Below, piece by piece: positions 16,378-41,588 of a stretch of DNA of 64,000 bases (the stretch's first letter is position 1; every line of letters begins with the position of its first letter). The position numbers were made by a program, and so were the translations under genes. The notes beneath the pieces are model-generated. The model did no database searches, was not told where the DNA came from, and was given only the letters and a program-made list of their open reading frames with translations. The stretch lies in IMG/VR virus record IMGVR_UViG_3300012988_000001, positions 186,001-250,000 of that record; one strand, given 5' to 3'.

Positions 16378-19300
16378 ATGTATATAGATGGATTTATGGA
16401 ACGTAAACGAACTGGTGATATTCTCCACGTAGCAGAACGTATCAACGGTCGTCGTGTCCTACGACAGCTTGACCCTGTATATGAATACTATGTCGAATCA
16501 CCAACCGGAACTTTCAAAACTATTCACGGTACTATGGCAGAACAGAAAACGTTCTCTAATAGTAGAGATTTGAAAAATTCCGTCGAGTTAGATGCAGGTA
16601 GAAGAATTTACGAATCAGATTGTAACGTAACATTCAAAACACTAGCTCGTGAATATATGGGTAAAGGATCACCAGATCTAAATATGGCATTTTTCGATAT
16701 TGAAACCGACTTTCACAAGAAGCTCGGATATGCCCCACCAAGTAACCCATTCAACCGTGTAACTGCAATTTCCATTTATCAAAGTTGGACAGATAAAGAT
16801 TACGTTCTTACTCTTGCTCCAGAAGATATGGATACAGTTGAAGCACAAGATATTATCAACCGTCTTAATGCGGAAACTAACAACCCAAACAGTACTGTAA
16901 TACTTTATACCGAAGAAACAGAAATGTTTAATGACTTCTTCGATCTAATCGATGATGCCGATGTACTTTCTGGTTGGAATAGTGAGTTTTATGATATTCC
17001 ATATATGATAAACCGTACTGCTAAAATCTTCAACGCTGCTACAACCGCTCGTTGGTGTTTGTGGAATAAGAAACCTGTAGCTCGTGAAGCTGATATGTTT
17101 GGTAAGACGATTACTACTTATGACCTAATTGGTCGTGTTCACCTAGATTATCTAGCATTGTATAAGAAACACGCAGGACAAGTAGAACAATCATATAAAC
17201 TAGACTTTATCGGTGAGAAAGTAACTGGTGAAAACAAAGTTGCTTATGAAGGTTCTCTTGACAAATTGTATCGTGAAGATTATGCTACGTTTCTACGTTA
17301 TTCTAAGCAGGATAGCATTCTACTTAAAAAGATTAACGATAAACTAGACTACATCAATCTACACAATCGACTAGCACACAAAGAATGTGTACTAATCAGT
17401 ACTACAATGGGTTCGGTAGCACTAATCGACACCGCAATAATCAACTTGGCACACAGCCGTGGTGAAGTAGTGTTCGATAAGAAACCACAAGAAGATGGGT
17501 TTGAGAGTGATGATCGTTATGATTATCTAATGGAAGACGAAGACGATGGCTCGGACAATGAACCAGTATCAGCTAAAGCAGCAGGTGCATGGGTACAAGA
17601 TCCAGTACTAGGACTAGTAGATTTCCTAGGATGTACTGACTTTAACTCACTATATCCAACGGTACTACGTGCACTTGGTATGAGTACTGAATGTATTCTA
17701 GGTCAAATCCGTCAAGATTATACTGATGCTCACCTTGCAGCACGTGTAGAAGAACAGCGTATTAAATCTAAATCGAAGAAATTCGAGCCAGATTGGACGG
17801 CTGCTTGGCACGGTCTATTTGCGAGTGTAGAATTCACTATGGTTCGTGAAAAATCCCAGAAGATTCTAAACGTAGATTTGGAAGACGGTTCAAGTTTCCA
17901 AGTAACTGGTGAAGAACTTTACAATATCATTTATGCACCTGATAGTACAATTGTACTTTCTGCAAATGGTACAATGTTCGATAAAACCAAATACGGTGTT
18001 ATCCCTGAGATTCTAACGCAGTGGTACTCTGAACGTAAATCACAGCAGAAGATGGTTATTGACTTTAAACACATCTATACTGATGGTTGGGAAATGCCAG
18101 AAGATGCAATTGCACGTATAGAGGCTGCTATGGCCCTCCACAGCCGTTCTGAGCGTATGTATCGCACAAACCTACACGAAGACGATCCAGTTTATTTGAT
18201 TCGTCAGGCGTTGGTACAGGCTGATTATGAGGGTGTTGGGAAGCTAATCACCGAGAATGGTCTATTGTTAGAAGATGGTCGTATCAAATGTACTAAAGAA
18301 GAGAAGTCTTATTGTAAGACACAATCTGCATTCTGGAAACAGAACCAACAGATTCGTAAAATTCTTCTAAACTCATTGTATGGTGCACTACTAAACAAAG
18401 GTTCTCGTTTCTTCGATAAACGTCTAGGTCAATCTGTTACACTAACTGGTCGTTCAATGACTAAACACATGGCATCCCGTATCAACGAGATCTGCACTGG
18501 TGTTTACGATCATGGCGGTGGTGTAGTAATCTATGGTGATACTGACTCCGTGTATTTCAGCGTAGCTCACTACATGAAAGAACAAGGTCTACCATTTGAT
18601 CTTACAAAAGAAGAAGTTGTCGATTTGTATGTTAAAATCGGTGACGAAATGGGTGCAACCTTCCCTGAATTTATGGATGAGACATTCAACACTGGTATTG
18701 AGAATGGTAAAATTGTAGGTGCTGACTTAGAAATGGTAGGCTCTCGTGGTCTATTCTTGAAGAAGAAGCGTTACGCTATTCTAAAGTACTGGGAAGATGG
18801 ATTCCGTAAAGATGAAGGTGATTCACCGGGTGAAATCAAAGCGATGGGCTTGGAAATTAAACGTTCCGATACGCCAAAATACATCCAAGATTTCTTACAA
18901 GAAACTCTTATCGCATTACTAGTTGGCGAACAAGAGGAACAACTACGCAATCGCGTTCGTGCGTTCAAAACTATTTTCAAAGACAAACCAGTACAACAGA
19001 AAGGTCAACCACGTACAGTGAAGAACTATTCGAACCTAGAAGAAGAGTACAAGAAAGTCGGTAAGATTTCTGTATCTCACGTTCTAGCAGCAATTCAATG
19101 GAACAAACTACGTGATATCTATGAAGATCAATCTGTACCAGAAGCAACTGACGGTACTAAAGTTATCGTTTGTAAGTTGAAGCCAAATCCAATGGGAATA
19201 AAAGCTGTCGGCTACCCAATTGATTGTGCTGAGTACTTACCAGAGTGGTTCTTGGATTTACCATTTGATGAAGATGAAATGGAAAAATCGGTCTTGACCA

Positions 19301-19395
19301 AAAAACTAGGTAACATTTTCGGTATCCTAAACATGGATATCGCAATAAACGAGAAGAGTACTATGGAAATGAACACAGGCTTCTTCTCATGGTAA
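16378..19395 (+). CDS. family B DNA polymerase (T4 gp43-like)
   Basis: Exo FDIET and GWNSEFYDIPY; Pol DFNSLYP, KILLNSLYG, YGDTDS. Confidence 0.98.
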   Translation: MYIDGFMERKRTGDILHVAERINGRRVLRQLDPVYEYYVESPTGTFKTIHGTMAEQKTFSNSRDLKNSVELDAGRRIYESDCNVTFKTLAREYMGKGSPDLNMAFFDIETDFHKKLGYAPPSNPFNRVTAISIYQSWTDKDYVLTLAPEDMDTVEAQDIINRLNAETNNPNSTVILYTEETEMFNDFFDLIDDADVLSGWNSEFYDIPYMINRTAKIFNAATTARWCLWNKKPVAREADMFGKTITTYDLIGRVHLDYLALYKKHAGQVEQSYKLDFIGEKVTGENKVAYEGSLDKLYREDYATFLRYSKQDSILLKKINDKLDYINLHNRLAHKECVLISTTMGSVALIDTAIINLAHSRGEVVFDKKPQEDGFESDDRYDYLMEDEDDGSDNEPVSAKAAGAWVQDPVLGLVDFLGCTDFNSLYPTVLRALGMSTECILGQIRQDYTDAHLAARVEEQRIKSKSKKFEPDWTAAWHGLFASVEFTMVREKSQKILNVDLEDGSSFQVTGEELYNIIYAPDSTIVLSANGTMFDKTKYGVIPEILTQWYSERKSQQKMVIDFKHIYTDGWEMPEDAIARIEAAMALHSRSERMYRTNLHEDDPVYLIRQALVQADYEGVGKLITENGLLLEDGRIKCTKEEKSYCKTQSAFWKQNQQIRKILLNSLYGALLNKGSRFFDKRLGQSVTLTGRSMTKHMASRINEICTGVYDHGGGVVIYGDTDSVYFSVAHYMKEQGLPFDLTKEEVVDLYVKIGDEMGATFPEFMDETFNTGIENGKIVGADLEMVGSRGLFLKKKRYAILKYWEDGFRKDEGDSPGEIKAMGLEIKRSDTPKYIQDFLQETLIALLVGEQEEQLRNRVRAFKTIFKDKPVQQKGQPRTVKNYSNLEEEYKKVGKISVSHVLAAIQWNKLRDIYEDQSVPEATDGTKVIVCKLKPNPMGIKAVGYPIDCAEYLPEWFLDLPFDEDEMEKSVLTKKLGNIFGILNMDIAINEKSTMEMNTGFFSW

Positions 19396-19406
19396 TAGGA
19401 ATATAA

Positions 19407-19985
19407 ATGACAATTTATCAACGCATTGGGGAGGCTATTGCCTCCCAAGGAAAAGTAACATTAGTAGCAGCATTAACTCCAGCAGAGGAACATATTCTAA
19501 CTACTAGTGGCTTCAAGAAAGTCGGTACTATGGATCTTAATGGTACTAACATCGATCTATTTGAAGTTAAAGTAACGCAAGTAGTCAACGCACCAGTACC
19601 ACCATATAACGGAATCCGTACTCCATCTCCGGGTGTACAACCGTATAAGACTAATGATACATATCCACGCAAGTATGAAGCACAATGGCCTGAGAACTAT
19701 CGTCTATATACTTACGGTACTGGTACTCCACCAGATGTTCAATATCGTGGTAGTACTACATCTCTTGTAGATGCAGCTTACAATCCACTTAGTATTCTAA
19801 GTGATTATACCTTACCGGAAAATAAAACATTACTAAAAATTGATATTGGTTCTTTGTCAACTGATGAAGTCCAAAAGGTATGTGATGATATCAAACGTGA
19901 TTACACGCCACGTGTGTACACAAACGATAGCTGGACCTCTTATAATCAAGGCTATACTGGAAACCGTGATTTCCGTAGCTGGTAA
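19407..19985 (+). CDS. hypothetical protein with portal-derived segments
   Basis: AGGA SD; contains TSLVDAAYNPLSILSDY and KIDIG segments matching the portal. Confidence 0.75.
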   Translation: MTIYQRIGEAIASQGKVTLVAALTPAEEHILTTSGFKKVGTMDLNGTNIDLFEVKVTQVVNAPVPPYNGIRTPSPGVQPYKTNDTYPRKYEAQWPENYRLYTYGTGTPPDVQYRGSTTSLVDAAYNPLSILSDYTLPENKTLLKIDIGSLSTDEVQKVCDDIKRDYTPRVYTNDSWTSYNQGYTGNRDFRSW

Positions 19986-20001
19986 GAAAATTTAGAAAAA
20001 G

Positions 20002-20032
20002 TTGGGACGTATGACTGATTATGTGATATAAT
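20002..20032 (+). promoter_or_regulatory. phage TTGGGACA-class promoter
   Basis: TTGGGACG...TGTGATATAAT. Confidence 0.85.
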
Positions 20033-20088
20033 ACATACGTCACAACGATTAAACGTTAATAACAAAATGGAAATTTGGAGATTTAAAA

Positions 20089-20820
20089 ATGGATTTACGC
20101 AACGTACTACGCGACCTAGTTAACACCACCAACGGTATGGATTTCTCTTGCATTGCAGTTTCACGAGAAGACCGTGGCAATGGTAATCGTGTTTTTCTAG
20201 AAGCATACACTGATGATAAAACCCTAATCATGCGAGCAACTACCAAAGAAGACGTACCTGAAGTTGAAGGTCGTTTCGGTCTTGGTAACCTCGGAATGCT
20301 ACAAGGTCTTATGAATCTAAAAACCTACAACTCTGAATCTGCTAAGATCGCAGTCAACGCAGCAAACGGTGTTGTTAAAAGCCTAGCATTCTCTTCTGAT
20401 GACGCTAGCACGAACTTTATTGTTCAATCTGAGAAGTTTATTCCTGCTCAACCACGCTTTACTCCACAACCATATGATGTACAGGTTACACCTAGTGCTG
20501 CAAAGGTTGGCGAACTAAAGTCATTCTCTGGTGTATTCAAATCATTCTCTGCCTTAGTTACTCCTTATACTGAAGGTGATACACTATACTTCCACGTGGG
20601 AGAGAAGAATAAATCTAATCACAGCGGTGCACTAGCATTCACCAAAACTGATGGTGAACTAAAACTAGGATATGGTTACGCAATCGACCGTCTTCTACAA
20701 GCTCTAAACCGCGTATCTAATGCTGAGTCTATCACATTAGGTCTAACCAAAACAGGTATGTTGAACGTAACAGTCGATACTGGTATCACTGTGTTCGAAT
20801 TCTACATCCAAGGTTGCTAA
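20089..20820 (+). CDS. sliding clamp (T4 gp45-like)
   Basis: 243 aa alpha/beta protein near PolB; FGLGNLGMLQGLM resembles clamp FgIydL..fl. Confidence 0.7.
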   Translation: MDLRNVLRDLVNTTNGMDFSCIAVSREDRGNGNRVFLEAYTDDKTLIMRATTKEDVPEVEGRFGLGNLGMLQGLMNLKTYNSESAKIAVNAANGVVKSLAFSSDDASTNFIVQSEKFIPAQPRFTPQPYDVQVTPSAAKVGELKSFSGVFKSFSALVTPYTEGDTLYFHVGEKNKSNHSGALAFTKTDGELKLGYGYAIDRLLQALNRVSNAESITLGLTKTGMLNVTVDTGITVFEFYIQGC

Positions 20821-31721: not shown

Positions 31722-32540
31722 ATGACTAAGATGGATGAATTTCTACAGAAAGTAATAGTAAACGATACTGAAACAACTGGTGTTGATGAGAATGCCGAAA
31801 TCATTGAATTCAGTGCTTCATTCCCAATGAGTGCGAATGATGGTATTGATGATATCGCAAACTATACTCAACGTTATAAACCAAGTATTCCAGTACCTGC
31901 TATTGCTTCTTCAGTACACTTTATTACTGACGAAGACTTGGCTGACTGTGGAACTTATAAAGATGATATTGAAAATATCGACCAACTATTTTTGGCTCGT
32001 GAATTCTATGTAGGCCACAACGTAGATTTCGACCGTGATATGTATATTCAAAATCACCGTCAACATGTGGGACAAGTCCCAGAATACATGCTAGGTAAAA
32101 CCAAGTGGATTTGCACCTTACGTTTAGCAAAAAAACTATTTGCCGAAGACATGTCTTATGAGAACTTCAAGCTAAGTTACTTGTGGTTCAAATATGATTT
32201 GCATAAAACTGTCAACCGCCCAATCAATGCACATGCCGCTAAAGATGACGTATTCATGTGCTACAAAGTACTAATCAAATTGGTTGAGATTTGTATTGAA
32301 CGTGGTGAGATTGACCCTAACCAAGATATTGGTGAACAAGTTATTGCATTCTGTAACAAACCTTATCGTTATCAAGTGATGCCAATTGGTAAGCACAAAG
32401 GAGAACTCATGAAGAATGTTCCTTTGAACTACTTGAACTGGATGATAACTAATAGTGATATTCTAAATTCAGACCTACCAAACTACGATGTGGATTTGGC
32501 TCACAGTATTGAATGCGAATACGCTGAAAGATCTAATTGA
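31722..32540 (+). CDS. DEDDh 3'-5' exonuclease (DnaQ/ExoX-like)
   Basis: DTETTG, GHNVDFD, HAAKDD; C-terminal MPIGKHKG. Confidence 0.9.
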   Translation: MTKMDEFLQKVIVNDTETTGVDENAEIIEFSASFPMSANDGIDDIANYTQRYKPSIPVPAIASSVHFITDEDLADCGTYKDDIENIDQLFLAREFYVGHNVDFDRDMYIQNHRQHVGQVPEYMLGKTKWICTLRLAKKLFAEDMSYENFKLSYLWFKYDLHKTVNRPINAHAAKDDVFMCYKVLIKLVEICIERGEIDPNQDIGEQVIAFCNKPYRYQVMPIGKHKGELMKNVPLNYLNWMITNSDILNSDLPNYDVDLAHSIECEYAERSN

Positions 32541-34098: not shown

Positions 34099-34539
34099 AT
34101 GGAACTTCGATCTTGTATCGCCTTTATTGGCGACTCCGCAACTTTAGAGAAGATCGATTCCTTGATTAACGAGGAATCATTGATTGATGACATGGTTTTT
34201 TCTGTAGACTTTATTGCAGAGCTTGAAACAGAAGACACCTATGTTTATCGTTGCTACAGCGATGCTGATGCATGGATTAATATCTATGAAATACAGAATC
34301 GTTTTGCCGAACACCTTGGCAAAGTAAAATATGACGTAATTTACGCAAGTACTGACTCAAAGACATTTGTCGATGTAGTTAGTATTACGGGTAATTTTGA
34401 TGCTTACATTGATACTGACACTGATAAAATTCAGGAAGTATGTGAGACTTACGGATTGGAGTTCTTTGGTTCTACTGATGATGATGAAGATGATTATCAG
34501 GATGAATATGACTACAACGCTGATAATGATTACTACTAG
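34099..34539 (+). CDS. hypothetical acidic protein
   Basis: 146 aa, D/E-rich tail, AAGGA SD. Confidence 0.65.
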   Translation: MELRSCIAFIGDSATLEKIDSLINEESLIDDMVFSVDFIAELETEDTYVYRCYSDADAWINIYEIQNRFAEHLGKVKYDVIYASTDSKTFVDVVSITGNFDAYIDTDTDKIQEVCETYGLEFFGSTDDDEDDYQDEYDYNADNDYY

Positions 34540-34547
34540 GAGGTATC

Positions 34548-35045
34548 ATGCAAATATTAACTCCCGAAAATTATGCGTATGAAATGGATTTGGTATCCGA
34601 TGAGATCCCAGAAGAAATGTATTGCGTATTAGATTTGAGCGACCACGGAGATTCGGATTTTTACTTCCGACCCATTAACCATACGGTTTCGTTCAATAGT
34701 CTAAGTGCAGACTTACAAATTGGTGATAAAATTATTCAAGTACCATTAGGATGGCAAATCCTATTAGGTGATGAAGATACCGGAATGGTAGAGATGTGTA
34801 CTATTGAAAACATCTTGAATATGAAAGATCCAAAAGCATATGTATATAATCCTATTCGCTCGATGTATGCACGGTTTGAAACTGTGAAAGTACTCCGAGT
34901 GTTTACACTAACAACTAAATGGCAGATGCCAATGGTACAACGCAAGAATTTATTAGCAGTACCATTAACTACTGGGTTTAATCCTCAGTGTGTATTCTTT
35001 GCCGATGAAAACGAAAAGATACCAGACCTTTACTTGGGGATATAA
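34548..35045 (+). CDS. hypothetical protein (possible inactive Hint-like fold)
   Basis: GGAGG SD; beta-rich pattern. Confidence 0.6.
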   Translation: MQILTPENYAYEMDLVSDEIPEEMYCVLDLSDHGDSDFYFRPINHTVSFNSLSADLQIGDKIIQVPLGWQILLGDEDTGMVEMCTIENILNMKDPKAYVYNPIRSMYARFETVKVLRVFTLTTKWQMPMVQRKNLLAVPLTTGFNPQCVFFADENEKIPDLYLGI

Positions 35046-35047
35046 TA

Positions 35048-35890
35048 ATGTTTGATTTCAGCAGCACAAAACAATCTAGTACTGAAGTTTATGAAGTAGA
35101 AAAGAAAATAGAGCTAGACATGAATCTATTACTAGAAAAAATTGATACAGCACAATATGGTTATTTTGAAACACTAAGCGATAATGAAAAGAAAAGTTTT
35201 CAACCTTATGTAATTCAACGTTGGATTAGTTCACTTGATGATTCTATGCAAGTAACTTATTCAGCAAAGGTGGTTGAAGCAATCTTTGGTAAATGGGCTA
35301 AGGGTGGTAAAGAAGCACTTAATGAATTACGTGCAGAATTCAAAACCCAAGGAATTGAATGTATCGGTGTTGCTAAGTATCAACATTCCCAATATGATTG
35401 GCGTATCAAATTTTCAGTTAAAGATAAAGCTAGTGCAGATAAACTAATTCAAGAAATGAAGGAATTTAACTGCACAGGCTATGAGATTGTTTCTCTAGTT
35501 GACAGCACAACCTACAAGTACTTACTAATTATGCTTAATAACATGGTTAATGATGGAATGTGGGATTTGCAGAATTCACCAGAATTGGTGTATAATTTGC
35601 TTTGTTCTGTATCATCTCTTATTGGTGGTCAGAAGCAAGCACACACATGGTTGCCATTCCCGAAAGGATTGAAGAACGTCAACAAAGACTTGTTTGACCT
35701 TATAAAGAAAACGCAATCCGAATTGGTAGCAAACCAACTTAATGAAGTAGAATATAAAATACTTCTCCTAAGTTATACAAAAGAATCTTTCACTGAACTA
35801 TTGACAGATTATGGTTTCCAAGATAGTGATAAGAAGAACTTTTTAAAACAATTCAAAACAGAGTGTGAGAAATATGGCAAAACAATTTAG
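35048..35890 (+). CDS. hypothetical, possibly clamp-loader small subunit (gp62-like) with insertion
   Basis: FQPYVIQRWISS resembles gp62 Y..F+INR.LS; replication cluster. Confidence 0.4.
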   Translation: MFDFSSTKQSSTEVYEVEKKIELDMNLLLEKIDTAQYGYFETLSDNEKKSFQPYVIQRWISSLDDSMQVTYSAKVVEAIFGKWAKGGKEALNELRAEFKTQGIECIGVAKYQHSQYDWRIKFSVKDKASADKLIQEMKEFNCTGYEIVSLVDSTTYKYLLIMLNNMVNDGMWDLQNSPELVYNLLCSVSSLIGGQKQAHTWLPFPKGLKNVNKDLFDLIKKTQSELVANQLNEVEYKILLLSYTKESFTELLTDYGFQDSDKKNFLKQFKTECEKYGKTI

Positions 35891-36593
35891 TTTATCTAAG
35901 AAAGCACCCACATACAAATGTGGGTTCTGTAATAAAGAATATAAAAGAGAAGAAACGGTCATGACACATAAATGTGAAAAACGTGACCGATACAATCAAA
36001 GAGACTCTCGCGAAATGCGGGAGGCTTTTCGTTTATACATGGAATTCATGAATAAACATAAATTGAGCATTGGTAAAAAGGAAGAACCACTAATGCATTT
36101 CATTAAGTCAAAGTACTTTAATGAATTCTACAAATTCGCTGAATACATTTTACAGAATGATATACTAGAGAAGGAAAAGTTCGTTGATGAAATTCTTACT
36201 TCTGGTAAACCAGTTTATGAATGGATGACGCACAAAACTTTAGAAGAGTGGATTATCAAATGTCTTCGTGATGAACATCCCCGCAGAGCAATTGAACGTT
36301 CTATTCCAGCACTCGTAGAGTGGGCTGAAATAACAGAAAGCGATTGGACCAACTTCTTTCACGAAGTCAGCCCGGTACGTGCAATTCAATGGCTAGAGTG
36401 TGGAAAAATATCTCCTTGGTTGATTTTCATCAGCCGTCCAGAATCAGGTAATGCTTTACTATCAAGGCTTTCACCATCAGAACTAGATTACATAGTTCGT
36501 TTCATTGATCCTACCTTCTACCAACGTAAGCAATTAAAGTACACACAGGATTGTAATGATATTCGTGCAATTCTAACAGAGGCAGGACTATGA
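35865..36593 (+). CDS. hypothetical protein with N-terminal C2H2/C2HC zinc finger
   Basis: CGFC...H.C. Confidence 0.65.
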   Translation: MRNMAKQFSLSKKAPTYKCGFCNKEYKREETVMTHKCEKRDRYNQRDSREMREAFRLYMEFMNKHKLSIGKKEEPLMHFIKSKYFNEFYKFAEYILQNDILEKEKFVDEILTSGKPVYEWMTHKTLEEWIIKCLRDEHPRRAIERSIPALVEWAEITESDWTNFFHEVSPVRAIQWLECGKISPWLIFISRPESGNALLSRLSPSELDYIVRFIDPTFYQRKQLKYTQDCNDIRAILTEAGL

Positions 36594-36949
36594 GTAATAT
36601 GTACAGTCAGAACCCACCAAAAGGTTCTTCAACAGTTTATAACACACCAAAAACAGCAGTAAATGAAAGCAAGACTGAAGAAAAAGATTCAGTGCAACAG
36701 GAGATTAAACTTCTTCGAGAAGCACATGTCACCGAGATTACACTCGGAAACCAAACCCTTAGAGTCATGGACGCAGGACATATACAAGGAGTAATTAACA
36801 TGCAGGAGAAGCAGTTTAAAGATATTAAACATCTTCAGAAAACAGTTAATACTCAAACTCGTGTCATCAGTTCCATGTCACAAGCAATTAGCAGCCTAGA
36901 ACGTGAGGTTGACGAATTAAAGAGAAAGTTAAATGGAAACTACTTATAG
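36590..36949 (+). CDS. hypothetical coiled-coil protein
   Basis: Heptad C-terminus; ATGA coupling. Confidence 0.6.
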   Translation: MSNMYSQNPPKGSSTVYNTPKTAVNESKTEEKDSVQQEIKLLREAHVTEITLGNQTLRVMDAGHIQGVINMQEKQFKDIKHLQKTVNTQTRVISSMSQAISSLEREVDELKRKLNGNYL

Positions 36950-37559
36950 AAAAGCCAGAACGGATATTGATATAGACGTTCGAAGTTCAAAAGAAGTTAT
37001 TGACCAACTTCCATGTGTTCGAAGTGTTGAACGGATTACTGAGAACGGAATGCAAGTACATAAAAGTGGGATACACTTTGATAACATTCCAGTAGACCCG
37101 GTTAGTGGATATGCAAGCATTGCATATAAAGAAGCCGAAAGGTTAGGATATCAAAAAGTTGATATACTATCGCAATCGGCATATGTGCATGTTCGAGATC
37201 GTGAACACTTAAAAGAATTAATGGCAAGAGAACCTGATTGGTCTTTATTATTAGTACCGGAAATCGTTGAGCAACTATCTCAGATTAAAAAACACATTGC
37301 ATTATTGCAGGTGTGGAAACCAAGTAGTATTGATGAACTCGCAATCTTTATTGCTATGATTCGTCCGGGTAAAAGGCATTGCCAGAGTATGAATAGTTGG
37401 AATGAGGTATTGGCTACGGTATGGGATTATAGTACAATTGGGCTTGACGGAGAAGGTAATAAGCTACGTTACTTCAAAAAACCTCACGCATATGCGTATA
37501 GTCACATGATAGTAGTACAGCTTAATGCATTAGTTGAGCATCTTACTTCTTCTTCTTGA
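36933..37559 (+). CDS. minimal family C (DnaE-like) polymerase catalytic domain
   Basis: DIDID, HKSG, KVDIL, IAMIRPG, FKKPHAYAY in DnaE order. Confidence 0.85.
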   Translation: METTYRKARTDIDIDVRSSKEVIDQLPCVRSVERITENGMQVHKSGIHFDNIPVDPVSGYASIAYKEAERLGYQKVDILSQSAYVHVRDREHLKELMAREPDWSLLLVPEIVEQLSQIKKHIALLQVWKPSSIDELAIFIAMIRPGKRHCQSMNSWNEVLATVWDYSTIGLDGEGNKLRYFKKPHAYAYSHMIVVQLNALVEHLTSSS

Positions 37560-37893
37560 GGGTAATATTTCGGCGTTTGATTCGTTTTGTTGGAAGGTCG
37601 CTCAATGATATTGAGGGACCGGACAGAAATGTAACACTATCAGTATTAAATCGTAATGTGTGTTCTTCGAAGACTTCCATTTCCTCTTGCATTGCTAGAC
37701 AAATTGGAATTGCACGATTGAACCCCCACCACCAAGAATCCGATAATGTTAATAACTCTTTCTGTTGGGATTCTTCCATTAAGTGGAAACAGTATAAAGT
37801 TGTATATTGTTTACTTCTAATCTTTATAATCCCATAATACATTTTACCGTCATGTTCCAGTACTGTTACATACGGCGGGTAAGTTTTAGTCAT
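37543..37893 (-). CDS. hypothetical protein
   Basis: GGAG SD favours start MTKTYPP; late promoter upstream. Confidence 0.6.
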   Translation of the reverse strand: MTKTYPPYVTVLEHDGKMYYGIIKIRSKQYTTLYCFHLMEESQQKELLTLSDSWWWGFNRAIPICLAMQEEMEVFEEHTLRFNTDSVTFLSGPSISLSDLPTKRIKRRNITLKKKK

Positions 37894-37936
37894 CAATGAG
37901 ACTCCCATAAATATTATATAGTTTAAAAGTACATAG

Positions 37937-37944
37937 TATTTATA
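37937..37944 (-). promoter_or_regulatory. T4-like late promoter
   Basis: TATAAATA on minus strand; divergent CATAAATA at 37906-37913. Confidence 0.6.
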
Positions 37945-37955
37945 GAGGTAAACTT

Positions 37956-38927
37956 ATGGCACATTATGGCGTTTATACGTACCCTACAAACAATCAGGTT
38001 GCTCTTGGCAACTTTAACATGCCTTTCAATCAAGAAAAGGTAACGATTTACAGAGGTGCAAATAACTCAGTCTCTTTTTCAGTACACAATGCTGACGGTA
38101 AGTATACCTTACTAAAAGAAGATGAGTTTTTAATTTTCACAATATTTGATGCCCGGAATAACACGAAGATCTTTGAAGTAGTATTAGAAAAGATTCTTCC
38201 ATCATGGGTATCAGAATCAGGTCAAGCTAGACCTACATTAAGTAACAAGCAAAAAGTGTATTACGGTTGTGTAGTACCTGCTGGTGTAATTCAAGATTTG
38301 AGTCCCGGATCAAAGTACAGATGGAGTATCCACAAAGTACAACTCAATGGTGATTTGGTAGAATCAAATGAATTTTTATATACAGGATTGAACTTTGAAG
38401 CAAGTTCTGATTTAATTATCAGTGATCAAGCTGCTCCGATATTTGTAGCATCGCAAGAGATTAGTGATACTAAAAATTCATCTTGGCTTCCAGTAGCACA
38501 CAAAGAGCGTCAACCTATCGCCAATGGTGTTAAGGGTGATTTCGACGTAATGCGTTCTTCATCTATTCCTGCTGGTGCTCAGTACGGTTTAGTTGATGGG
38601 TTGAGTACTATTGCATTTTATTTCAAGAATTTCGTTGGTAGAATCCAACTCCAAGGATGTTTGGCAAATAATTCCCCTATTGATAGCGAGGAATATAAAT
38701 GGTTTATCATCAAACTTGATGGTCAAGAATACATTGAAAGTGGATGGGATGAACATGGTATACCACGGAGTATCGATGGTATTCAAGCATTCAATTTTAA
38801 AGGGAATTACATGTGGCTTCGTGTTGTATGTTGCATTCCACCAAAAATTGTGCATTATCCACCAGCGGAGATTGTTAAAGAGTACAAGCCATTGTTGACT
38901 GTACCAAAGATTTTAATCAGACGATAA
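37956..38927 (+). CDS. probable virion structural protein (beta-sandwich domains)
   Basis: Beta-rich, late-type promoter upstream. Confidence 0.45.
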   Translation: MAHYGVYTYPTNNQVALGNFNMPFNQEKVTIYRGANNSVSFSVHNADGKYTLLKEDEFLIFTIFDARNNTKIFEVVLEKILPSWVSESGQARPTLSNKQKVYYGCVVPAGVIQDLSPGSKYRWSIHKVQLNGDLVESNEFLYTGLNFEASSDLIISDQAAPIFVASQEISDTKNSSWLPVAHKERQPIANGVKGDFDVMRSSSIPAGAQYGLVDGLSTIAFYFKNFVGRIQLQGCLANNSPIDSEEYKWFIIKLDGQEYIESGWDEHGIPRSIDGIQAFNFKGNYMWLRVVCCIPPKIVHYPPAEIVKEYKPLLTVPKILIRR

Positions 38928-38929
38928 AC

Positions 38930-38960
38930 TTGGGATGAACCTGACAAAATGTGATATAAT
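38930..38960 (+). promoter_or_regulatory. phage TTGGGACA-class promoter
   Basis: TTGGGATG...TGTGATATAAT. Confidence 0.8.
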
Positions 38961-38984
38961 CAACGTACAAGCGAGGATAAAATT

Positions 38985-40034
38985 ATGAATCAGGTTCAAA
39001 TTATTACGGCGAACTTGATGCAAGATCCTGTCCCAGCAATGGGTGCATGGAAGCATCATAACTGCCCTGCCTGTGTTTTCCGTGGACAACCAAGACCGGA
39101 CACACGACAACGTGGAAATCACGTATTTAATAACGATGGTGGGATCGGATATAACTGTTTCAACTGTGGTATTAAAGTAAACTGGTCACCCGGTAGATAT
39201 ATGAGCAACGACTTTGAAACGTTGCTCGTTTCATATGGGGCATCAGATAAAGACATTGCATATCTTAAACTGTTCATTGATGAAATGGTTAAGAGTGGTG
39301 ATTATGAAGTTGAGGAATCAGCAACTAATAAATTGTTCCAACGAATCACCAAAAGAGAATTACCCCAAGGAGCAAAGAGTTTTGCACAATGGGTACAAGA
39401 AGATAACATACCTGAACAATTCCTAAGTGTGTTAAACGCAGTACATGAACGTAATCCATATTTAATTGATTTGGATTTATATTGGAGTCCTGCAAAAGAA
39501 CATCGTATGTATGATAGGTTCATTATACCGTATTATATGCATGGTGAAATTATAGGTTATACGGCTAGGCACAAAGAGGTAGATAGCAATTATCGCTATG
39601 TTAATCAAGTAAGCACTAGCCTTCTTTATAACTTTGATTTACTCAATGATGATAGAATTAAAGTTATATTGGTAGCAGAAGGACCAATCGACGCAGCGTT
39701 GATGTGTGGTGTATCTGCAAACAACTATCAATTACAGCAAGCCCAAATTGAATTATTAAAGGCTGCACAAGAAAAAGGTAAGAAGATAGTAATTGTACCA
39801 GATCGTGATAAGGATGGTATTAAAGCAATCGAGCAAGCATTGGAGCATGGCTTTAGTATTGCGTGTCCAGATTACGGTACTGTACGTACAACAGACGGGC
39901 GAGGGATTCGCCACGTAAAAGATTTAGACGAAGCATGTGCAAAATACGGACGGTTATTCTGTGTGAAGTTAATTCACGAAAGTATTATAGATGACCCGTT
40001 CCTTATTGAAGTACAAAAAGGCAAATGGATTTGA
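38985..40034 (+). CDS. DNA primase (T4 gp61/DnaG-like)
   Basis: CPAC...CFNC zinc domain; TOPRIM AEGPID and PDRD. Confidence 0.9.
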   Translation: MNQVQIITANLMQDPVPAMGAWKHHNCPACVFRGQPRPDTRQRGNHVFNNDGGIGYNCFNCGIKVNWSPGRYMSNDFETLLVSYGASDKDIAYLKLFIDEMVKSGDYEVEESATNKLFQRITKRELPQGAKSFAQWVQEDNIPEQFLSVLNAVHERNPYLIDLDLYWSPAKEHRMYDRFIIPYYMHGEIIGYTARHKEVDSNYRYVNQVSTSLLYNFDLLNDDRIKVILVAEGPIDAALMCGVSANNYQLQQAQIELLKAAQEKGKKIVIVPDRDKDGIKAIEQALEHGFSIACPDYGTVRTTDGRGIRHVKDLDEACAKYGRLFCVKLIHESIIDDPFLIEVQKGKWI

Positions 40035-40043
40035 GGAATTAGA

Positions 40044-41588
40044 ATGAGCTTAGTAAACACGGACGTTAAACAATATGGAATTAACTATCAACTATATCTA
40101 CTATCAAAGGTCTTCAGTAATCCAGATGTATTTGTACGATGCAAGAACATCTTAAAACCTGAATATTTTGATAAAGAATTCCATAATAGCATTACCTTTG
40201 TGCACGAACATGCACAAAAATATAGTACAAGTCCATCCCTTAGTGATATTGAGATGAAAGGTGGCTTTCTTTACAGAAACGAAAAGATTCAAGCAATTGA
40301 TGAACAATCAGTACTTGATGATATTGGTGAATTCTGTCGTCATAAAGCACTAGCACTCGCAGTACAAAAAGGAATGGAATTAGTAAACCAAAAGAAATAT
40401 GGTGGTATCGAAGAACTGATTCGAGAAGCTATGTTAGTAACCGTACAGAATGAATTGGGTCTAGATGTATATGAAAACCCAGAAGAAACTATTCGCTCTT
40501 TGAATAGCAATCAAGGTTCATTCAAAACTGGTTGGGAAACATTAGACTTTAAACTACAAGGTGGTTTCGGTCGTCAAGAACTTGAAATCTTTGCGGCAGC
40601 ATCTGGTGGTGGTAAGTCTGTAGTACTACAGAACTTGGCAGTAAACTTCTCTAAGCAAGGGAAGGTTGGGGCATATATTTCCCTAGAACTAGCAGAGGAA
40701 CTAGTAGCAGTACGTATCTATTCAATGATGGTAAACAAGAAAGGCCAAGAGTTAAAATCTTCCCCTGAAAACTCAAGTATTCAGATTAAATTGGAAGAGA
40801 AGACTAGTGGTTCTTTACGTATTAAACGTATGCCTGAATCAGTTACGACCGTGAATGATATTGAAAGTTATCTTCGTGAACTACAAATTAAAACTGGCCT
40901 AAAGCTAGATTATGTTTGTGTGGATTATCTTGATCTATTAACTTCTGATCGTTGTGGGCCGAACGATGCATCAAACGCATTTGTTAAAGATAAATTCGTT
41001 TCGGAAGAATTACGTGCACTCGCAATGAAAATGGATATTACTGTTGTAACTGCTTGTCAGTTTAACCGTAGTGGTATTAGTGAAGAGAAAAAATCACAGA
41101 GTCAAATCGCTGGTGGTATTTCTAAGATCTATACTGCGGATAACGTAATTTACATTGAGGCAAAACGCGAAACTGGTGAAATGTGGTTTGACTTCCAGAA
41201 AACTCGTAACAGTGGTGCAGTTGGTTCTCGTCTACGTATGTCTTATAATATCGATAGCCTACGAGTACTCGACCATGCAATCACGGTACAGCAAATGGAA
41301 CTAGACGGCTTCGGCTTCAAGCATATGGGTTCATTCCCAATTGGTGGTGGAAACGCAGTCAGCGGCCCAGCAGTGGCCCAGCAGCAAACACCAATGCAGA
41401 TGCTACACTCTCACTTCCAAGCTACTCAGGCACAGTCACAGAGCGTTCCTGACCCTGTTTCTATACCTGCGGCCCAATCTCCCGGTATTCAAGATACTTC
41501 TATTTCTACTGGAATAAATACAACAAATGATCCAAGCAAGAACAATGTGAATCAGCTTGCCATCAGGAGTTTATTGAATAGGAAATAA
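40044..41588 (+). CDS. replicative DnaB-like helicase (T4 gp41-like)
   Basis: AASGGGKS, SLEL, VDYLD, ACQFNR, KTRNSG. Confidence 0.95.
   Translation: MSLVNTDVKQYGINYQLYLLSKVFSNPDVFVRCKNILKPEYFDKEFHNSITFVHEHAQKYSTSPSLSDIEMKGGFLYRNEKIQAIDEQSVLDDIGEFCRHKALALAVQKGMELVNQKKYGGIEELIREAMLVTVQNELGLDVYENPEETIRSLNSNQGSFKTGWETLDFKLQGGFGRQELEIFAAASGGGKSVVLQNLAVNFSKQGKVGAYISLELAEELVAVRIYSMMVNKKGQELKSSPENSSIQIKLEEKTSGSLRIKRMPESVTTVNDIESYLRELQIKTGLKLDYVCVDYLDLLTSDRCGPNDASNAFVKDKFVSEELRALAMKMDITVVTACQFNRSGISEEKKSQSQIAGGISKIYTADNVIYIEAKRETGEMWFDFQKTRNSGAVGSRLRMSYNIDSLRVLDHAITVQQMELDGFGFKHMGSFPIGGGNAVSGPAVAQQQTPMQMLHSHFQATQAQSQSVPDPVSIPAAQSPGIQDTSISTGINTTNDPSKNNVNQLAIRSLLNRK

What the first reader, a model, noticed from the sequence alone, without database searches (positions are those of the whole stretch)
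36933..37559. 208-aa minimal DnaE-type polymerase alongside a complete PolB replisome
Seen: RKARTDIDID, HKSG, KVDIL, P.SI.ELA..IAMIRPG and FKKPHAYAY in DnaE order. Known: these correspond to DnaE catalytic D401/D403/D555 and the nucleotide-binding finger motif; cellular DnaE exceeds 1000 aa. PHP, most of the thumb and fingers, the clamp-binding and OB domains are absent, yet the catalytic set is intact. Similar modules may already be annotated in related jumbo phages; I know of no functional test. Inference: primer-extension, protein-priming or nucleotidyl-transfer enzyme, possibly completed by the upstream co-transcribed hypotheticals (35048-36949).
Basis: partly seen in the sequence, partly recalled or inferred. 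Interest (0 to 1): 0.75.

Follow-up and report, generated by a model that had tools for sequence, protein, structure and literature searches.

The report
Half of a split mini-DnaE polymerase
This 208-residue jumbo-phage protein is the C-terminal, metal- and template-binding half of a stripped-down bacterial-type (Pol III alpha) DNA polymerase whose other half is encoded about 33 kb away; the arrangement was described by comparative genomics in 2021 and I found no experimental test of it.

Summary
The ORF and its DnaE-type motifs are real, conserved and under strong purifying selection (dN/dS 0.03-0.09). Its AlphaFold model (pLDDT 96.6) aligns only with C-family polymerases (Z up to 9.7; next unrelated fold 3.5), spanning E. 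coli alpha residues ~399-781 in 200 residues.

It is not a self-contained polymerase. It starts at the catalytic DxD strand and lacks the N-terminal palm half that carries the G-R-G-S nucleotide-binding motif. That half is a separate 172-aa gene at genome position 255508-256026, about 33 kb downstream and outside the window. It passes Pfam PF07733's threshold. Rare homologs have both halves fused in one protein. The two halves are predicted to bind (ipSAE 0.89, best control 0.00).

The upstream hypotheticals are not the missing DnaE parts. The one conserved upstream neighbour is a zinc-finger protein with weak resemblance to the T4 gp59 helicase loader.

Iyer et al. 2021 (PMC7824862) already described this "minimal, split Pol III alpha" beside PolB in group 2.2 jumbo phages. 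New details found here:
- Two tightly conserved neighbour genes of the C-half.
- Linkage of the C-half to primosome genes and of the N-half to the clamp loader.
- Unsplit variants, one next to a primase-type replicase.

The parts
36933..37559 (+). C-terminal half (Mg2+/template-binding palm strands plus reduced fingers) of a split minimal Pol III alpha-like polymerase. Its partner N-half (172 aa) lies outside the window at G000:C1:255508-256026 (+) = L002:1228-1746.
   Evidence: phrog_11778 'DNA polymerase' E 9e-100. Only Pol III alpha hits in PDB by profile and by fold, Z up to 9.7. Invariant D11/D13/D77. dN/dS 0.03-0.09. N-half found by PF07733, E 1.2e-10. Fused homologs P0216/P0250. Predicted N+C complex ipSAE 0.89 vs best control 0.00.
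35865..36593 (+). Conserved upstream neighbour (242 aa): N-terminal CCHC/C2H2-type zinc finger plus an all-helical domain. Possibly a divergent gp59-like helicase loader.
   Evidence: Present on the same strand in 74 of 80 loci, while 74 of 80 loci have >=800 nt upstream. Median 211 nt upstream, often with stop/start abutting. Same arrangement in PA5oct. C19/C22/H35/C37 invariant. zf-C2H2 in 38/47 members. AF2 pLDDT 93.5. Best PDB fold hit T4 gp59 C-domain, Z 4.3, then an HMG domain, Z 3.7. BFVD top non-self hits are 'DNA helicase loader', prob 0.35-0.38. hhalign to T4 gp59 is not significant.
37543..37908 (-). Conserved convergent neighbour (121 aa, W-W-W motif, basic C-terminal tail) whose 3' end overlaps the polymerase gene's 3' end by 17 nt. 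Function unknown.
   Evidence: Present on the opposite strand, abutting (median 11.5 nt), in 78 of 80 loci, while 78 of 80 loci have >=400 nt downstream. Also present next to the unsplit homolog in L085 (HMM E 3.6e-9) and in PA5oct. phrog_11637, unknown function. No Pfam, PDB or Atlas lead.
36590..36949 (+). 119-aa coiled-coil-like ORF between the 242-aa gene and the polymerase half. Lineage-specific filler, not part of the conserved unit.
   Evidence: Homolog near the C-half in only 2/80 loci. Weak coiled-coil-type Pfam hits. phrog_14909 'virion structural protein', E 2.6e-15.
35048..35890 (+). 280-aa hypothetical protein. Not a conserved partner.
   Evidence: Homolog near the C-half in 9/80 loci. 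phrog_11758, unknown function. No Pfam domain.
38985..40034 (+). DnaG/Toprim-type primase, part of the conserved block downstream of the C-half.
   Evidence: phrog_47 'DNA primase' E 3.7e-28. Toprim hits. Present downstream in 58/80 loci, median 1.5 kb away.
40044..41588 (+). DnaB-type replicative helicase.
   Evidence: PF03796 E 4e-19. Present downstream in 45/80 loci.
16378..19395 (+). Family B DNA polymerase (1005 aa), the presumed main replicase that accompanies the mini Pol III alpha.
   Evidence: PF00136 E 4e-22 and PF03104 E 4.5e-19. PolB present in 5/5 distant complete genomes that carry the mini-DnaE.

Best explanation
The 208-aa protein is the C-terminal subunit of a two-gene, minimal C-family (Pol III alpha-like) nucleotidyltransferase found in RaK2/121Q-like and other 'group 2.2' jumbo phages.

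What each half carries:
- C-half: the three catalytic aspartates (D11, D13, D77), the beta-strands of the Pol-beta-like palm that hold them, and a much reduced finger module. The finger module includes the helix with the counterpart of the E. coli steric-gate histidine (H185 = H760).
- N-half: a separate 172-aa protein encoded ~33 kb downstream. It supplies the N-terminal palm half with the G-R-G-S triphosphate-binding motif. The break falls in the loop just before the DxD strand.

Shown:
- Homology and fold of the C-half.
- Conservation of the catalytic residues and purifying selection.
- Existence of the partner gene and of fused forms.
- Co-occurrence of the two halves in the same phages, and presence of PolB.

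Inferred:
- The two halves assemble non-covalently into one active site. There is no room for intein sequences.
- The enzyme uses dNTPs on a template.
- It works as an accessory polymerase beside the family B replicase. The most likely role is extending primers at the primosome, or repair synthesis. The C-half sits in a conserved block of helicase-loader-like protein, primase and DnaB. The N-half sits next to the clamp loader. One unsplit homolog directly follows a primase-type replicase.

My odds: about 0.9 that it is the C-half of a split mini Pol III alpha that needs the N-half; about 0.6 that the pair is an active template-dependent DNA polymerase; about 0.3 for the specific primer-extension role.
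For: - Family and fold: phrog_11778 E 9e-100. The profile finds only Pol III alpha in PDB, collinear. AF2 pLDDT 96.6. Foldseek top 10 are all Pol III alpha/PolC. VIA Z 9.7/9.6/8.2 to Taq alpha 456-841, PolC 966-1299 and E. coli alpha 399-781, against 3.5 for the next fold.
- Catalytic residues are invariant in 111 sequences.
- H185 aligns to E. coli H760, the modelled steric gate (PMC8485763).
- dN/dS is 0.03-0.09.
- Partner: PF07733 hit above cut-off at G000:C1:255781-256020. The ORF ends in the GRGSS...EFLKW motif. It is 37% identical, E 1e-22, to the N-part of the fused homolog P0216. Fused P0216/P0250 carry PF07733 N-terminally.
- Complex: ipSAE 0.89 vs best control 0.00. The mark was reached by 58 of 80 solved complexes and 2 of 110 mismatched pairs. 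The counts hold only roughly because own alignments were used.
- Co-occurrence: the same phage lineages hold both genes, 4.5-182 kb apart on the same strand. 5 of 6 distant records >=90% complete hold both. The partner is never within 10 kb (0/80 and 0/80).
- PolB is present in 5/5 distant complete genomes.
- Context: primase 58/80 and DnaB 45/80 near the C-half. Clamp loader 62/80 near the N-half. Unsplit P0250 overlaps the stop of a PF03090 Replicase gene.
- Prior description: Iyer et al. 2021, PMC7824862.
Against: - I found no biochemical or genetic test in the searched literature.
- Thumb, HhH/clamp-binding and OB domains are absent, so stable primer-template binding is unexplained.
- The C-half alone fails Pfam's thresholds (DNA_pol3_finger 12.5 bits vs cut-off 22).
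- The complex score may reflect the model's memory of single-chain DnaE structures (caveat).
- One apparently complete 543-kb genome (G006) has an N-half but no detectable C-half.
- The gene-order conservation may simply reflect a syntenic replication module rather than a direct functional link.
- Transcription was not shown. The available 'RNA' runs are wastewater metagenomic libraries kept as contigs.
Confidence: 0.8

Rival explanations
1. One reading: the 208-aa protein is by itself a minimal DnaE-type polymerase, or is completed by the co-transcribed upstream hypotheticals 35048-36949.
For: - The catalytic Asp triad and finger motifs are all in this protein.
- ORFs 34099-37559 are packed with overlapping stops and starts and no intergenic terminator-like hairpin.
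- The 242-aa upstream gene is almost always adjacent (74/80).
Against: - The protein begins 10 residues before the DxD strand and lacks the palm half with the GS motif. That half exists as a separate, co-occurring gene and is fused in rare homologs.
- The 242-aa neighbour folds as a zinc finger plus helical domain with no DnaE-like match.
- The 280-aa and 119-aa ORFs are not conserved neighbours.
- No PF07733 signal lies in 35048-36949.
Confidence: 0.05
2. The N+C pair is an active Pol-beta-fold nucleotidyltransferase but not a templated DNA polymerase. It could be a terminal transferase, a primer-independent NTase, or a maker of a nucleotide signal or modification used in phage-host conflict.
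For: - It lacks the thumb, HhH and OB DNA-binding domains.
- The Pol-beta-like superfamily includes many non-templated NTases (established knowledge).
- A full PolB is already present.
Against: - The retained part beyond the palm is exactly the DnaE finger helices that contact template and incoming dNTP, including the steric-gate His, >=90% conserved.
- Both halves sit in replication gene blocks, not defence or counter-defence islands.
- One unsplit form is paired with a primase-type replicase.
Confidence: 0.12
3. The protein is a non-catalytic remnant that serves as a structural or regulatory subunit of the PolB replisome or primosome.
For: - Extreme domain loss.
- Tight linkage with helicase-loader-like, primase and DnaB genes.
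Against: - The metal-binding aspartates, K75, H185 and the R-P-x-K block are invariant or nearly so over >100 diverse sequences, as is the GRGSS motif in the partner.
- Such conservation of active-site residues under dN/dS < 0.1 is not expected of a scaffold.
Confidence: 0.05

Closest known systems
Split minimal DNA polymerase III alpha of group 2.2 jumbo phages (Iyer, Anantharaman, Krishnan, Burroughs, Aravind 2021, Viruses 13:63; PMC7824862)
   Same: It is the same entity. It is phage-specific and consists of just the catalytic NTase plus template-binding module. It is split into an N-terminal NTP-binding protein and a C-terminal Mg2+/template-binding protein encoded by distant genes. It accompanies a family B polymerase, and no other Pol III domains are present (reproduced independently).
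   Different: Nothing essential differs. Details found here that I did not see in the passages of that paper I read:
- The near-universal 242-aa zinc-finger and convergent 121-aa neighbours.
- Linkage of the N-half to a GroES-like gene and the clamp loader.
- Unsplit variants.
- The complex prediction and the dN/dS values.
Bacterial replicative C-family polymerases DnaE / PolC (e.g. PDB 2hnh, 3e0d, 3f2b, 5lew)
   Same: It has the Pol-beta-like palm with DxD plus a third Asp, a GS loop (here in trans), and the finger helices with the F-x-K-x-H-A-x-x-Y motif. The structural match is Z 8-10 over ~200 residues.
   Different: - About 380 aa in two chains, against >900-1400 aa in one chain.
- No PHP domain.
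- The thumb is reduced to a short hairpin.
- No beta-clamp-binding/HhH, OB or tau-binding domains.
- It co-exists with a PolB replicase instead of being the replicase.
- The C-half falls below Pfam thresholds.
Bacillus subtilis DnaE as primer-extending partner of PolC
   Same: This is a possible functional analogy: a second C-family polymerase that briefly extends primase-made primers before hand-off to the main replicase (abstract of PMC5627055 seen). The phage C-half lies two genes from the primase, and an unsplit homolog follows a primase-type replicase.
   Different: The analogy rests only on gene context. B. subtilis DnaE is a full-length, single-chain enzyme, and the main replicase here is family B, not PolC.
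Naturally split cyanobacterial DnaE joined by a split intein (own knowledge, not tested here)
   Same: It is a DnaE catalytic subunit encoded by two distant genes.
   Different: The cyanobacterial halves carry intein halves and are trans-spliced into one chain, and the split lies elsewhere in a full-length DnaE. Here the N-half ends 1 residue after the conserved E-F-L-K motif. The C-half has only 10 residues before the DxD, so there is no room for intein sequences. Association must be non-covalent.
T4 gp59 helicase-loading protein (for the 242-aa neighbour)
   Same: - Two-part helical architecture. Residues 139-241 match the gp59 C-domain (Z 4.3) and residues 49-132 match an HMG domain (Z 3.7).
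- The top non-self BFVD hits are annotated helicase loaders.
- It is located in the primase/DnaB block.
- The genome has no Pfam-detectable gp59 elsewhere.
   Different: - It has an extra N-terminal zinc finger.
- Scores are below the level that separates real from chance helical matches.
- The profile-sequence comparison with T4 gp59 is not significant.

Membership tests
C-family DNA polymerase catalytic subunit (Pol III alpha: DnaE/PolC) | Pol-beta-like palm strands with the DxD pair and a third catalytic Asp | tested here: met
   D11/D13 (with D15) and D77 are invariant or nearly so. They are collinear with PDIDIDF and K-M-D-F of Mtb DnaE1. The fold match spans E. coli alpha 399-781. E. coli D401/D403/D555 are the active-site residues (PMC8485763).
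C-family DNA polymerase catalytic subunit (Pol III alpha: DnaE/PolC) | N-terminal palm half with the G-[RG]-G-S nucleotide-binding loop in the same polypeptide | tested here: not met
   It is absent from the 208-aa protein, which starts 10 residues before the DxD. It is present in trans on the 172-aa protein at L002:1228-1746 (PF07733 39 bits, cut-off 23.9; GRGSS invariant).
C-family DNA polymerase catalytic subunit (Pol III alpha: DnaE/PolC) | Finger helices with the steric-gate His motif (F-N-K-S-H-x-A-A-Y in E. coli) | tested here: met
   F181-K-K-P-H185-A-Y-A-Y189 aligns without gaps to E. coli 756-764. H185 and Y189 are >=90% conserved. The H760 role is from PMC8485763.
C-family DNA polymerase catalytic subunit (Pol III alpha: DnaE/PolC) | PHP domain | tested here: not met
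   PF02811 finds nothing in the whole 366-kb genome, while 14/14 control genomes ring.
C-family DNA polymerase catalytic subunit (Pol III alpha: DnaE/PolC) | Thumb, beta-clamp-binding/HhH and OB domains | tested here: not met
   Only about 60 residues lie between the DxD and K-x-D strands. The model ends at about E. coli residue 781-784 of 1160. No separate search with HhH/OB models was run.
C-family DNA polymerase catalytic subunit (Pol III alpha: DnaE/PolC) | Passes curated Pfam thresholds (PF07733 / PF17657) | tested here: not met
   C-half: DNA_pol3_finger 12.5 bits vs cut-off 22, and no PF07733 hit. The N-half does pass PF07733.
C-family DNA polymerase catalytic subunit (Pol III alpha: DnaE/PolC) | Template-directed DNA polymerase activity | not testable with these tools
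   No experimental report found.
Split minimal Pol III alpha of group 2.2 jumbo phages (Iyer et al. 2021) | Two standalone proteins (N-terminal NTP-binding, C-terminal Mg2+/template-binding) encoded by distant genes | tested here: met
   The genes lie at 222933-223559 and 255508-256026 of the genome. The partner is never within 10 kb in 80 + 80 related loci. 79/80 N-halves are in ORFs of <=230 aa.
Split minimal Pol III alpha of group 2.2 jumbo phages (Iyer et al. 2021) | Accompanied by a family B polymerase and T4-type replication core, without other Pol III domains | tested here: met
   PolB, gp32-like SSB, UvsX/Y, DnaB and primase are in the window. An RFC-type clamp loader is next to the N-half. 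No PHP. PolB is present in 5/5 distant complete genomes.
Split minimal Pol III alpha of group 2.2 jumbo phages (Iyer et al. 2021) | The two halves reconstitute one enzyme | tested here: inconclusive
   Prediction only: ipSAE 0.89, best of 3 controls 0.00. The mark was reached by 58 of 80 solved complexes and 2 of 110 mismatched pairs. The pass may come from memory of single-chain DnaE. Fused homologs support it.
T4 gp59 helicase loader (for the neighbour at 35865-36593) | Sequence or fold match to the gp59 N (HMG-like) and C domains | tested here: inconclusive
   VIA Z 4.3 to 1c1k C-domain and 3.7 to an HMG domain. BFVD helicase loaders at prob 0.35-0.38. Pfam gp59 models are silent. hhalign to T4 gp59 gives prob 0.1%.

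The most novel reading that the evidence does not exclude
The mini Pol III alpha is the catalytic core of an 'exploded', multi-subunit polymerase. In this reading, the DNA-binding and processivity functions that cellular DnaE carries in its thumb, HhH and OB domains are supplied by separate conserved proteins. Candidates are the convergent 121-aa protein with its basic tail and/or the zinc-finger, gp59-like 242-aa protein. The assembly would dock on the primosome to extend primers before hand-off to PolB. If so, it would be a modular C-family polymerase with no cellular counterpart and a working model of an ancestral state.
Probability: 0.2. Interest if true: 0.7.

Novelty: already known. Interest (0 to 1): 0.4.

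Why it matters
If the two small proteins really form an active polymerase, they would define the smallest known functional core of the bacterial replicative polymerase family: about 380 residues, with no PHP, thumb, clamp-binding or OB domains. It would work beside an archaeo-eukaryotic-type PolB. That bears on how C-family polymerases arose and on why very large phages keep two unrelated polymerases. The family is abundant (at least 595 matching stretches in IMG/VR and 253 clusters at 50% identity), strongly conserved, and present in easily cultured E. coli, Klebsiella, Salmonella and Pseudomonas phages. The five-year-old prediction can therefore be tested directly. The conserved neighbour genes found here give concrete candidates for additional subunits.

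Tried and rejected
1. Pfam on the C-half alone gave only a sub-threshold DNA_pol3_finger hit. It is not usable as proof by itself.
2. A second PF07733 hit at genome 67228-67338 (E 0.014) lies in a frame with deaminase-like H-A-E...P-C-x-x-C motifs by eye. I rejected it as spurious.
3. The upstream ORFs as missing DnaE domains: no Pfam or PDB support, and the fold of the 242-aa protein is unrelated to DnaE.
4. gp59 identity of the 242-aa protein: the Pfam gp59 models and hhalign against T4 gp59 were negative. Only weak fold similarity remains.
5. The 121-aa convergent protein: Pfam (single sequence and 47 members), a PDB profile search and the protein atlas gave nothing.
6. Sliding clamp: the Pfam gp45 models found nothing in the genome.
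7. The DnaQ-like exonuclease as an obligate partner of the mini-DnaE: it was found in only 1 of 5 distant complete genomes and 2 of 80 loci. Rejected.
8. Expression evidence: the runs holding the sequence are wastewater 'metagenomic RNA-Seq' contigs that may hold it as DNA. I did not lay reads. The PA5oct omics paper and a 2026 jumbo-phage review do not mention the gene.
9. Intein-mediated joining: rejected from the lengths of the termini.
10. Promoter and terminator scans were uninformative: 12 promoter-like sites against 19 expected.
Full report
**What is there.** The window is positions 186001-250000 of a 366,160-bp phage genome with direct terminal repeats. Its nearest cultured relatives are the RaK2/121Q-like jumbo phages Munch, 7t3, SE_PL, PHA46 and fENko-Kae01, at ~79% nucleotide identity over the locus. 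ORF 36933-37559 (+) encodes 208 residues.

**Is it more than chance?** Yes.
- The protein matches PHROG 11778 ('DNA polymerase') end to end, E 9e-100.
- tblastn finds it in 96 phage records.
- An exhaustive search finds 253 clusters at 50% identity. Among the 150 listed, most are 190-210 aa and none exceeds 375 aa.
- At least 595 matching stretches exist in IMG/VR.
- In 111 aligned homologs down to ~28% identity, D11, D13, K75, D77 and P145 are invariant. D15, H43, G46, R144, K147, K182, H185 and Y189 are at least 90% conserved.
- Pairwise dN/dS against three relatives is 0.03-0.09, although dS is near saturation for some pairs.

**Homology to DnaE.** Pfam gives only a sub-threshold finger-domain hit. 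A family profile searched against all PDB sequences returns only Pol III alpha chains. The four weak stretches are collinear: DIDID with Mtb DnaE1 411-424, the K-x-D/FQL/RPG block with 568-674, and F-K-K-x-H-A-x-x-Y with 764-787.

The AlphaFold model is very confident, with pLDDT 96.6 and pTM 0.87. Foldseek's ten best PDB hits are all Pol III alpha or PolC. VIA-align gives Z 9.7 (Taq alpha 456-841), 9.6 (PolC 966-1299), 9.3 (Mtb DnaE1 414-811) and 8.2 (E. coli alpha 399-781) over 188-204 residues. The best unrelated fold scores 3.5.

So the protein corresponds to the stretch of DnaE from the catalytic DxD strand to the finger helix carrying H760, squeezed from ~383 residues into 200. By the ungapped alignment, H185 corresponds to E. 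coli H760. That residue is the modelled steric gate against ribonucleotides, and D401/D403/D555 are the active-site aspartates (PMC8485763).

**It is only half an enzyme.** The protein begins ten residues before the DxD. It therefore lacks the preceding half of the Pol-beta-like palm. Two longer homologs gave this away. P0216 (375 aa) and P0250 (336 aa) carry, upstream of the mini-domain, a significant match to PF07733 model positions ~12-121 (E 5e-16 and 1e-8).

Searching the phage's own genome with PF07733 found an above-threshold match (39 bits, E 1.2e-10) in a separate frame at 255781-256020. The ORF (L002:1228-1746, 172 aa) ends in a G-R-G-S-S ... E-F-L-K-W motif. It aligns over its full length with the N-part of P0216, 37% identity, E 1e-22. 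G137, G139, R140, G141, S142 and S143 are invariant in 46 homologs.

The break is in the loop just before the DxD strand. The termini leave no room for intein halves. No PHP domain exists anywhere in the genome.

**Do the halves belong together?**
- The N-half is found in the same phage lineages as the C-half: RaK2-like phages, PA5oct, Atu_ph07, XacN1, RsoM2USA, Slicko01 and Vibrio 2.275.O. It is always a separate gene on the same strand, 4.5 to 182 kb away.
- In 80 diverse IMG/VR loci for each half, the partner is never within 10 kb (0/80 and 0/80). 79 of 80 N-halves lie in ORFs of 230 aa or less.
- Of six distant records rated at least 90% complete, five hold both halves.
- The exception is G006 (543 kb). 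It has a normal N-half but no detectable C-half even at E 10.
- A two-chain prediction supports binding: ipSAE 0.89 in three runs, best of three controls 0.00. That mark was reached by 58 of 80 solved complexes and 2 of 110 mismatched pairs. Those counts hold only roughly because I supplied my own alignments. The pass may reflect the model's memory of single-chain DnaE.

**Prior art.** Iyer, Anantharaman, Krishnan, Burroughs and Aravind (Viruses 2021; PMC7824862) describe exactly this in 'group 2.2' jumbo phages. [quoted passage not shown] The version accompanies a family B polymerase and is proposed to help in synthesis of one strand or in repair.

Genome papers and many GenBank records already label the N-half 'DNA polymerase III alpha subunit', and RefSeq/PHROG-based annotation labels the C-half 'DNA polymerase'. 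I found no experimental test. A 2026 review of jumbo phages does not mention it.

Across the 80 C-half loci (35-80% identity), two uncharacterised neighbours are essentially universal.
- The 242-aa ORF 35865-36593 is on the same strand in 74 loci, while 74 loci have at least 800 nt of upstream flank. It lies a median of 211 nt upstream, and its stop often abuts or overlaps the polymerase start.
- The 121-aa ORF 37543-37908 is on the opposite strand, convergent and abutting, in 78 loci, while 78 loci have at least 400 nt of downstream flank.

PA5oct shows the same layout. The 121-aa gene also abuts the unsplit homolog in L085. The other two upstream ORFs, 280 aa and 119 aa, are not conserved (9/80 and 2/80).

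The 242-aa protein has an invariant CCHC zinc finger and a confident all-helical fold, pLDDT 93.5. Its best matches are weak but coherent:
- T4 gp59 C-domain, Z 4.3, and an HMG domain, Z 3.7.
- Two annotated helicase loaders as the top non-self BFVD hits.

Pfam gp59 models and hhalign against T4 gp59 are negative. I therefore read it as a possible divergent helicase loader, not as a DnaE fragment. The 121-aa protein remains without any lead.

More broadly, the C-half lies in a syntenic block: UvsX-UvsY-...-UvsW-like helicase-...-242-aa gene-C-half-121-aa gene-...-primase-DnaB. The N-half lies in a different block: N-half, a 129-aa unknown (72/80), a GroES-like protein (74/80) and a gp44-type clamp loader (62/80). 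The unsplit P0250 overlaps the stop codon of a PF03090 primase-type 'Replicase' gene.

**Mechanism.**
- Shown: homology, fold, residue conservation, selection, the partner gene, fused forms, co-occurrence, and PolB in 5/5 distant complete genomes.
- Inferred: non-covalent assembly of N and C into one two-metal active site; dNTP use, from the conserved steric-gate His; and an accessory, replisome-linked role such as primer extension or repair synthesis beside PolB, from gene context.
- Unexplained: how a core without thumb, HhH or OB domains holds primer-template. The conserved neighbours are candidates for that role, but this is speculation.

**The 'complete PolB replisome' claim.** PolB, primase, DnaB, SSB, UvsX/Y, a UvsW-like helicase, a FEN-type nuclease and a DnaQ-like exonuclease are in the window. 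The clamp loader is ~7 kb beyond its end. No sliding clamp could be recognised.

**Verdict.** The feature is already known from comparative genomics and is functionally untested. Interest is moderate.

Noticed in passing
window 37543-37908 (-): A 121-aa gene converges on the polymerase half and overlaps its 3' end by 17 nt. It has a W-W-W motif and a basic C-terminal tail. It is present in 78 of 80 related loci (78 have >=400 nt of downstream flank) and next to an unsplit homolog. It has no match in Pfam, PDB or the protein atlas. It is the most tightly linked gene and a candidate extra subunit or antisense regulator.
   Followed up: partly
window 35865-36593 (+): A 242-aa protein with an invariant CCHC zinc finger and a helical domain that weakly resembles the T4 gp59 helicase loader. 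It is almost always directly upstream of the polymerase half. The genome has no Pfam-detectable gp59 elsewhere.
   Followed up: partly
L086:1516-4181: An unsplit 336-aa mini Pol III alpha (P0250) overlaps the stop of a 552-aa PF03090 'Replicase' (primase-type initiator) gene on an 8-kb metagenomic contig. This is a compact primase-plus-polymerase pair outside the jumbo-phage context.
   Followed up: partly
L085:1066-2415: A second unsplit form (P0216, 375 aa), on a 2.4-kb contig, keeps the convergent 121-aa-type gene at its 3' end.
   Followed up: partly
G006 (543-kb viral record; N-half at L109:9947-10504): This apparently complete genome has a normal standalone N-half with its usual neighbours, but no C-half is detectable even at E 10. 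It is either a very divergent C-half, a search miss, or an orphan N-half.
   Followed up: partly
L168:10043-12055 (genome 256043-258055, outside the window): The N-half has its own conserved downstream block: a 129-aa unknown (72/80 loci), a GroES/Cpn10-like protein (74/80) and the gp44-type clamp-loader ATPase (62/80).
   Followed up: partly
window 31722-32540 (+): A standalone DnaQ/epsilon-like 3'-5' exonuclease (RNase_T, E 5e-15) is present although PolB has its own exonuclease domain. Relatives annotate it as 'polymerase exonuclease subunit'. It is found in only 1 of 5 distant complete genomes that carry the mini-DnaE, so it is not an obligate partner.
   Followed up: partly
G008:C1:236315-239392: In one distant complete genome, the family B polymerase matches fall in two separate open frames (806 aa and 374 aa). 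This suggests a split PolB gene.
   Followed up: no
whole genome G000: Neither a gp45-type sliding clamp nor a gp59 loader is detectable with Pfam models, although a clamp loader is present. The 243-aa and 192-aa unknowns just downstream of PolB (window 19407-20820) are unexamined candidates.
   Followed up: no
window 35000-39000: Near-identical sequence (0.95-1.00 of sampled words) is held by several public runs. These include 2025 wastewater libraries and 2018 runs labelled with a single organism, so this phage or a very close relative has been sampled repeatedly.
   Followed up: no
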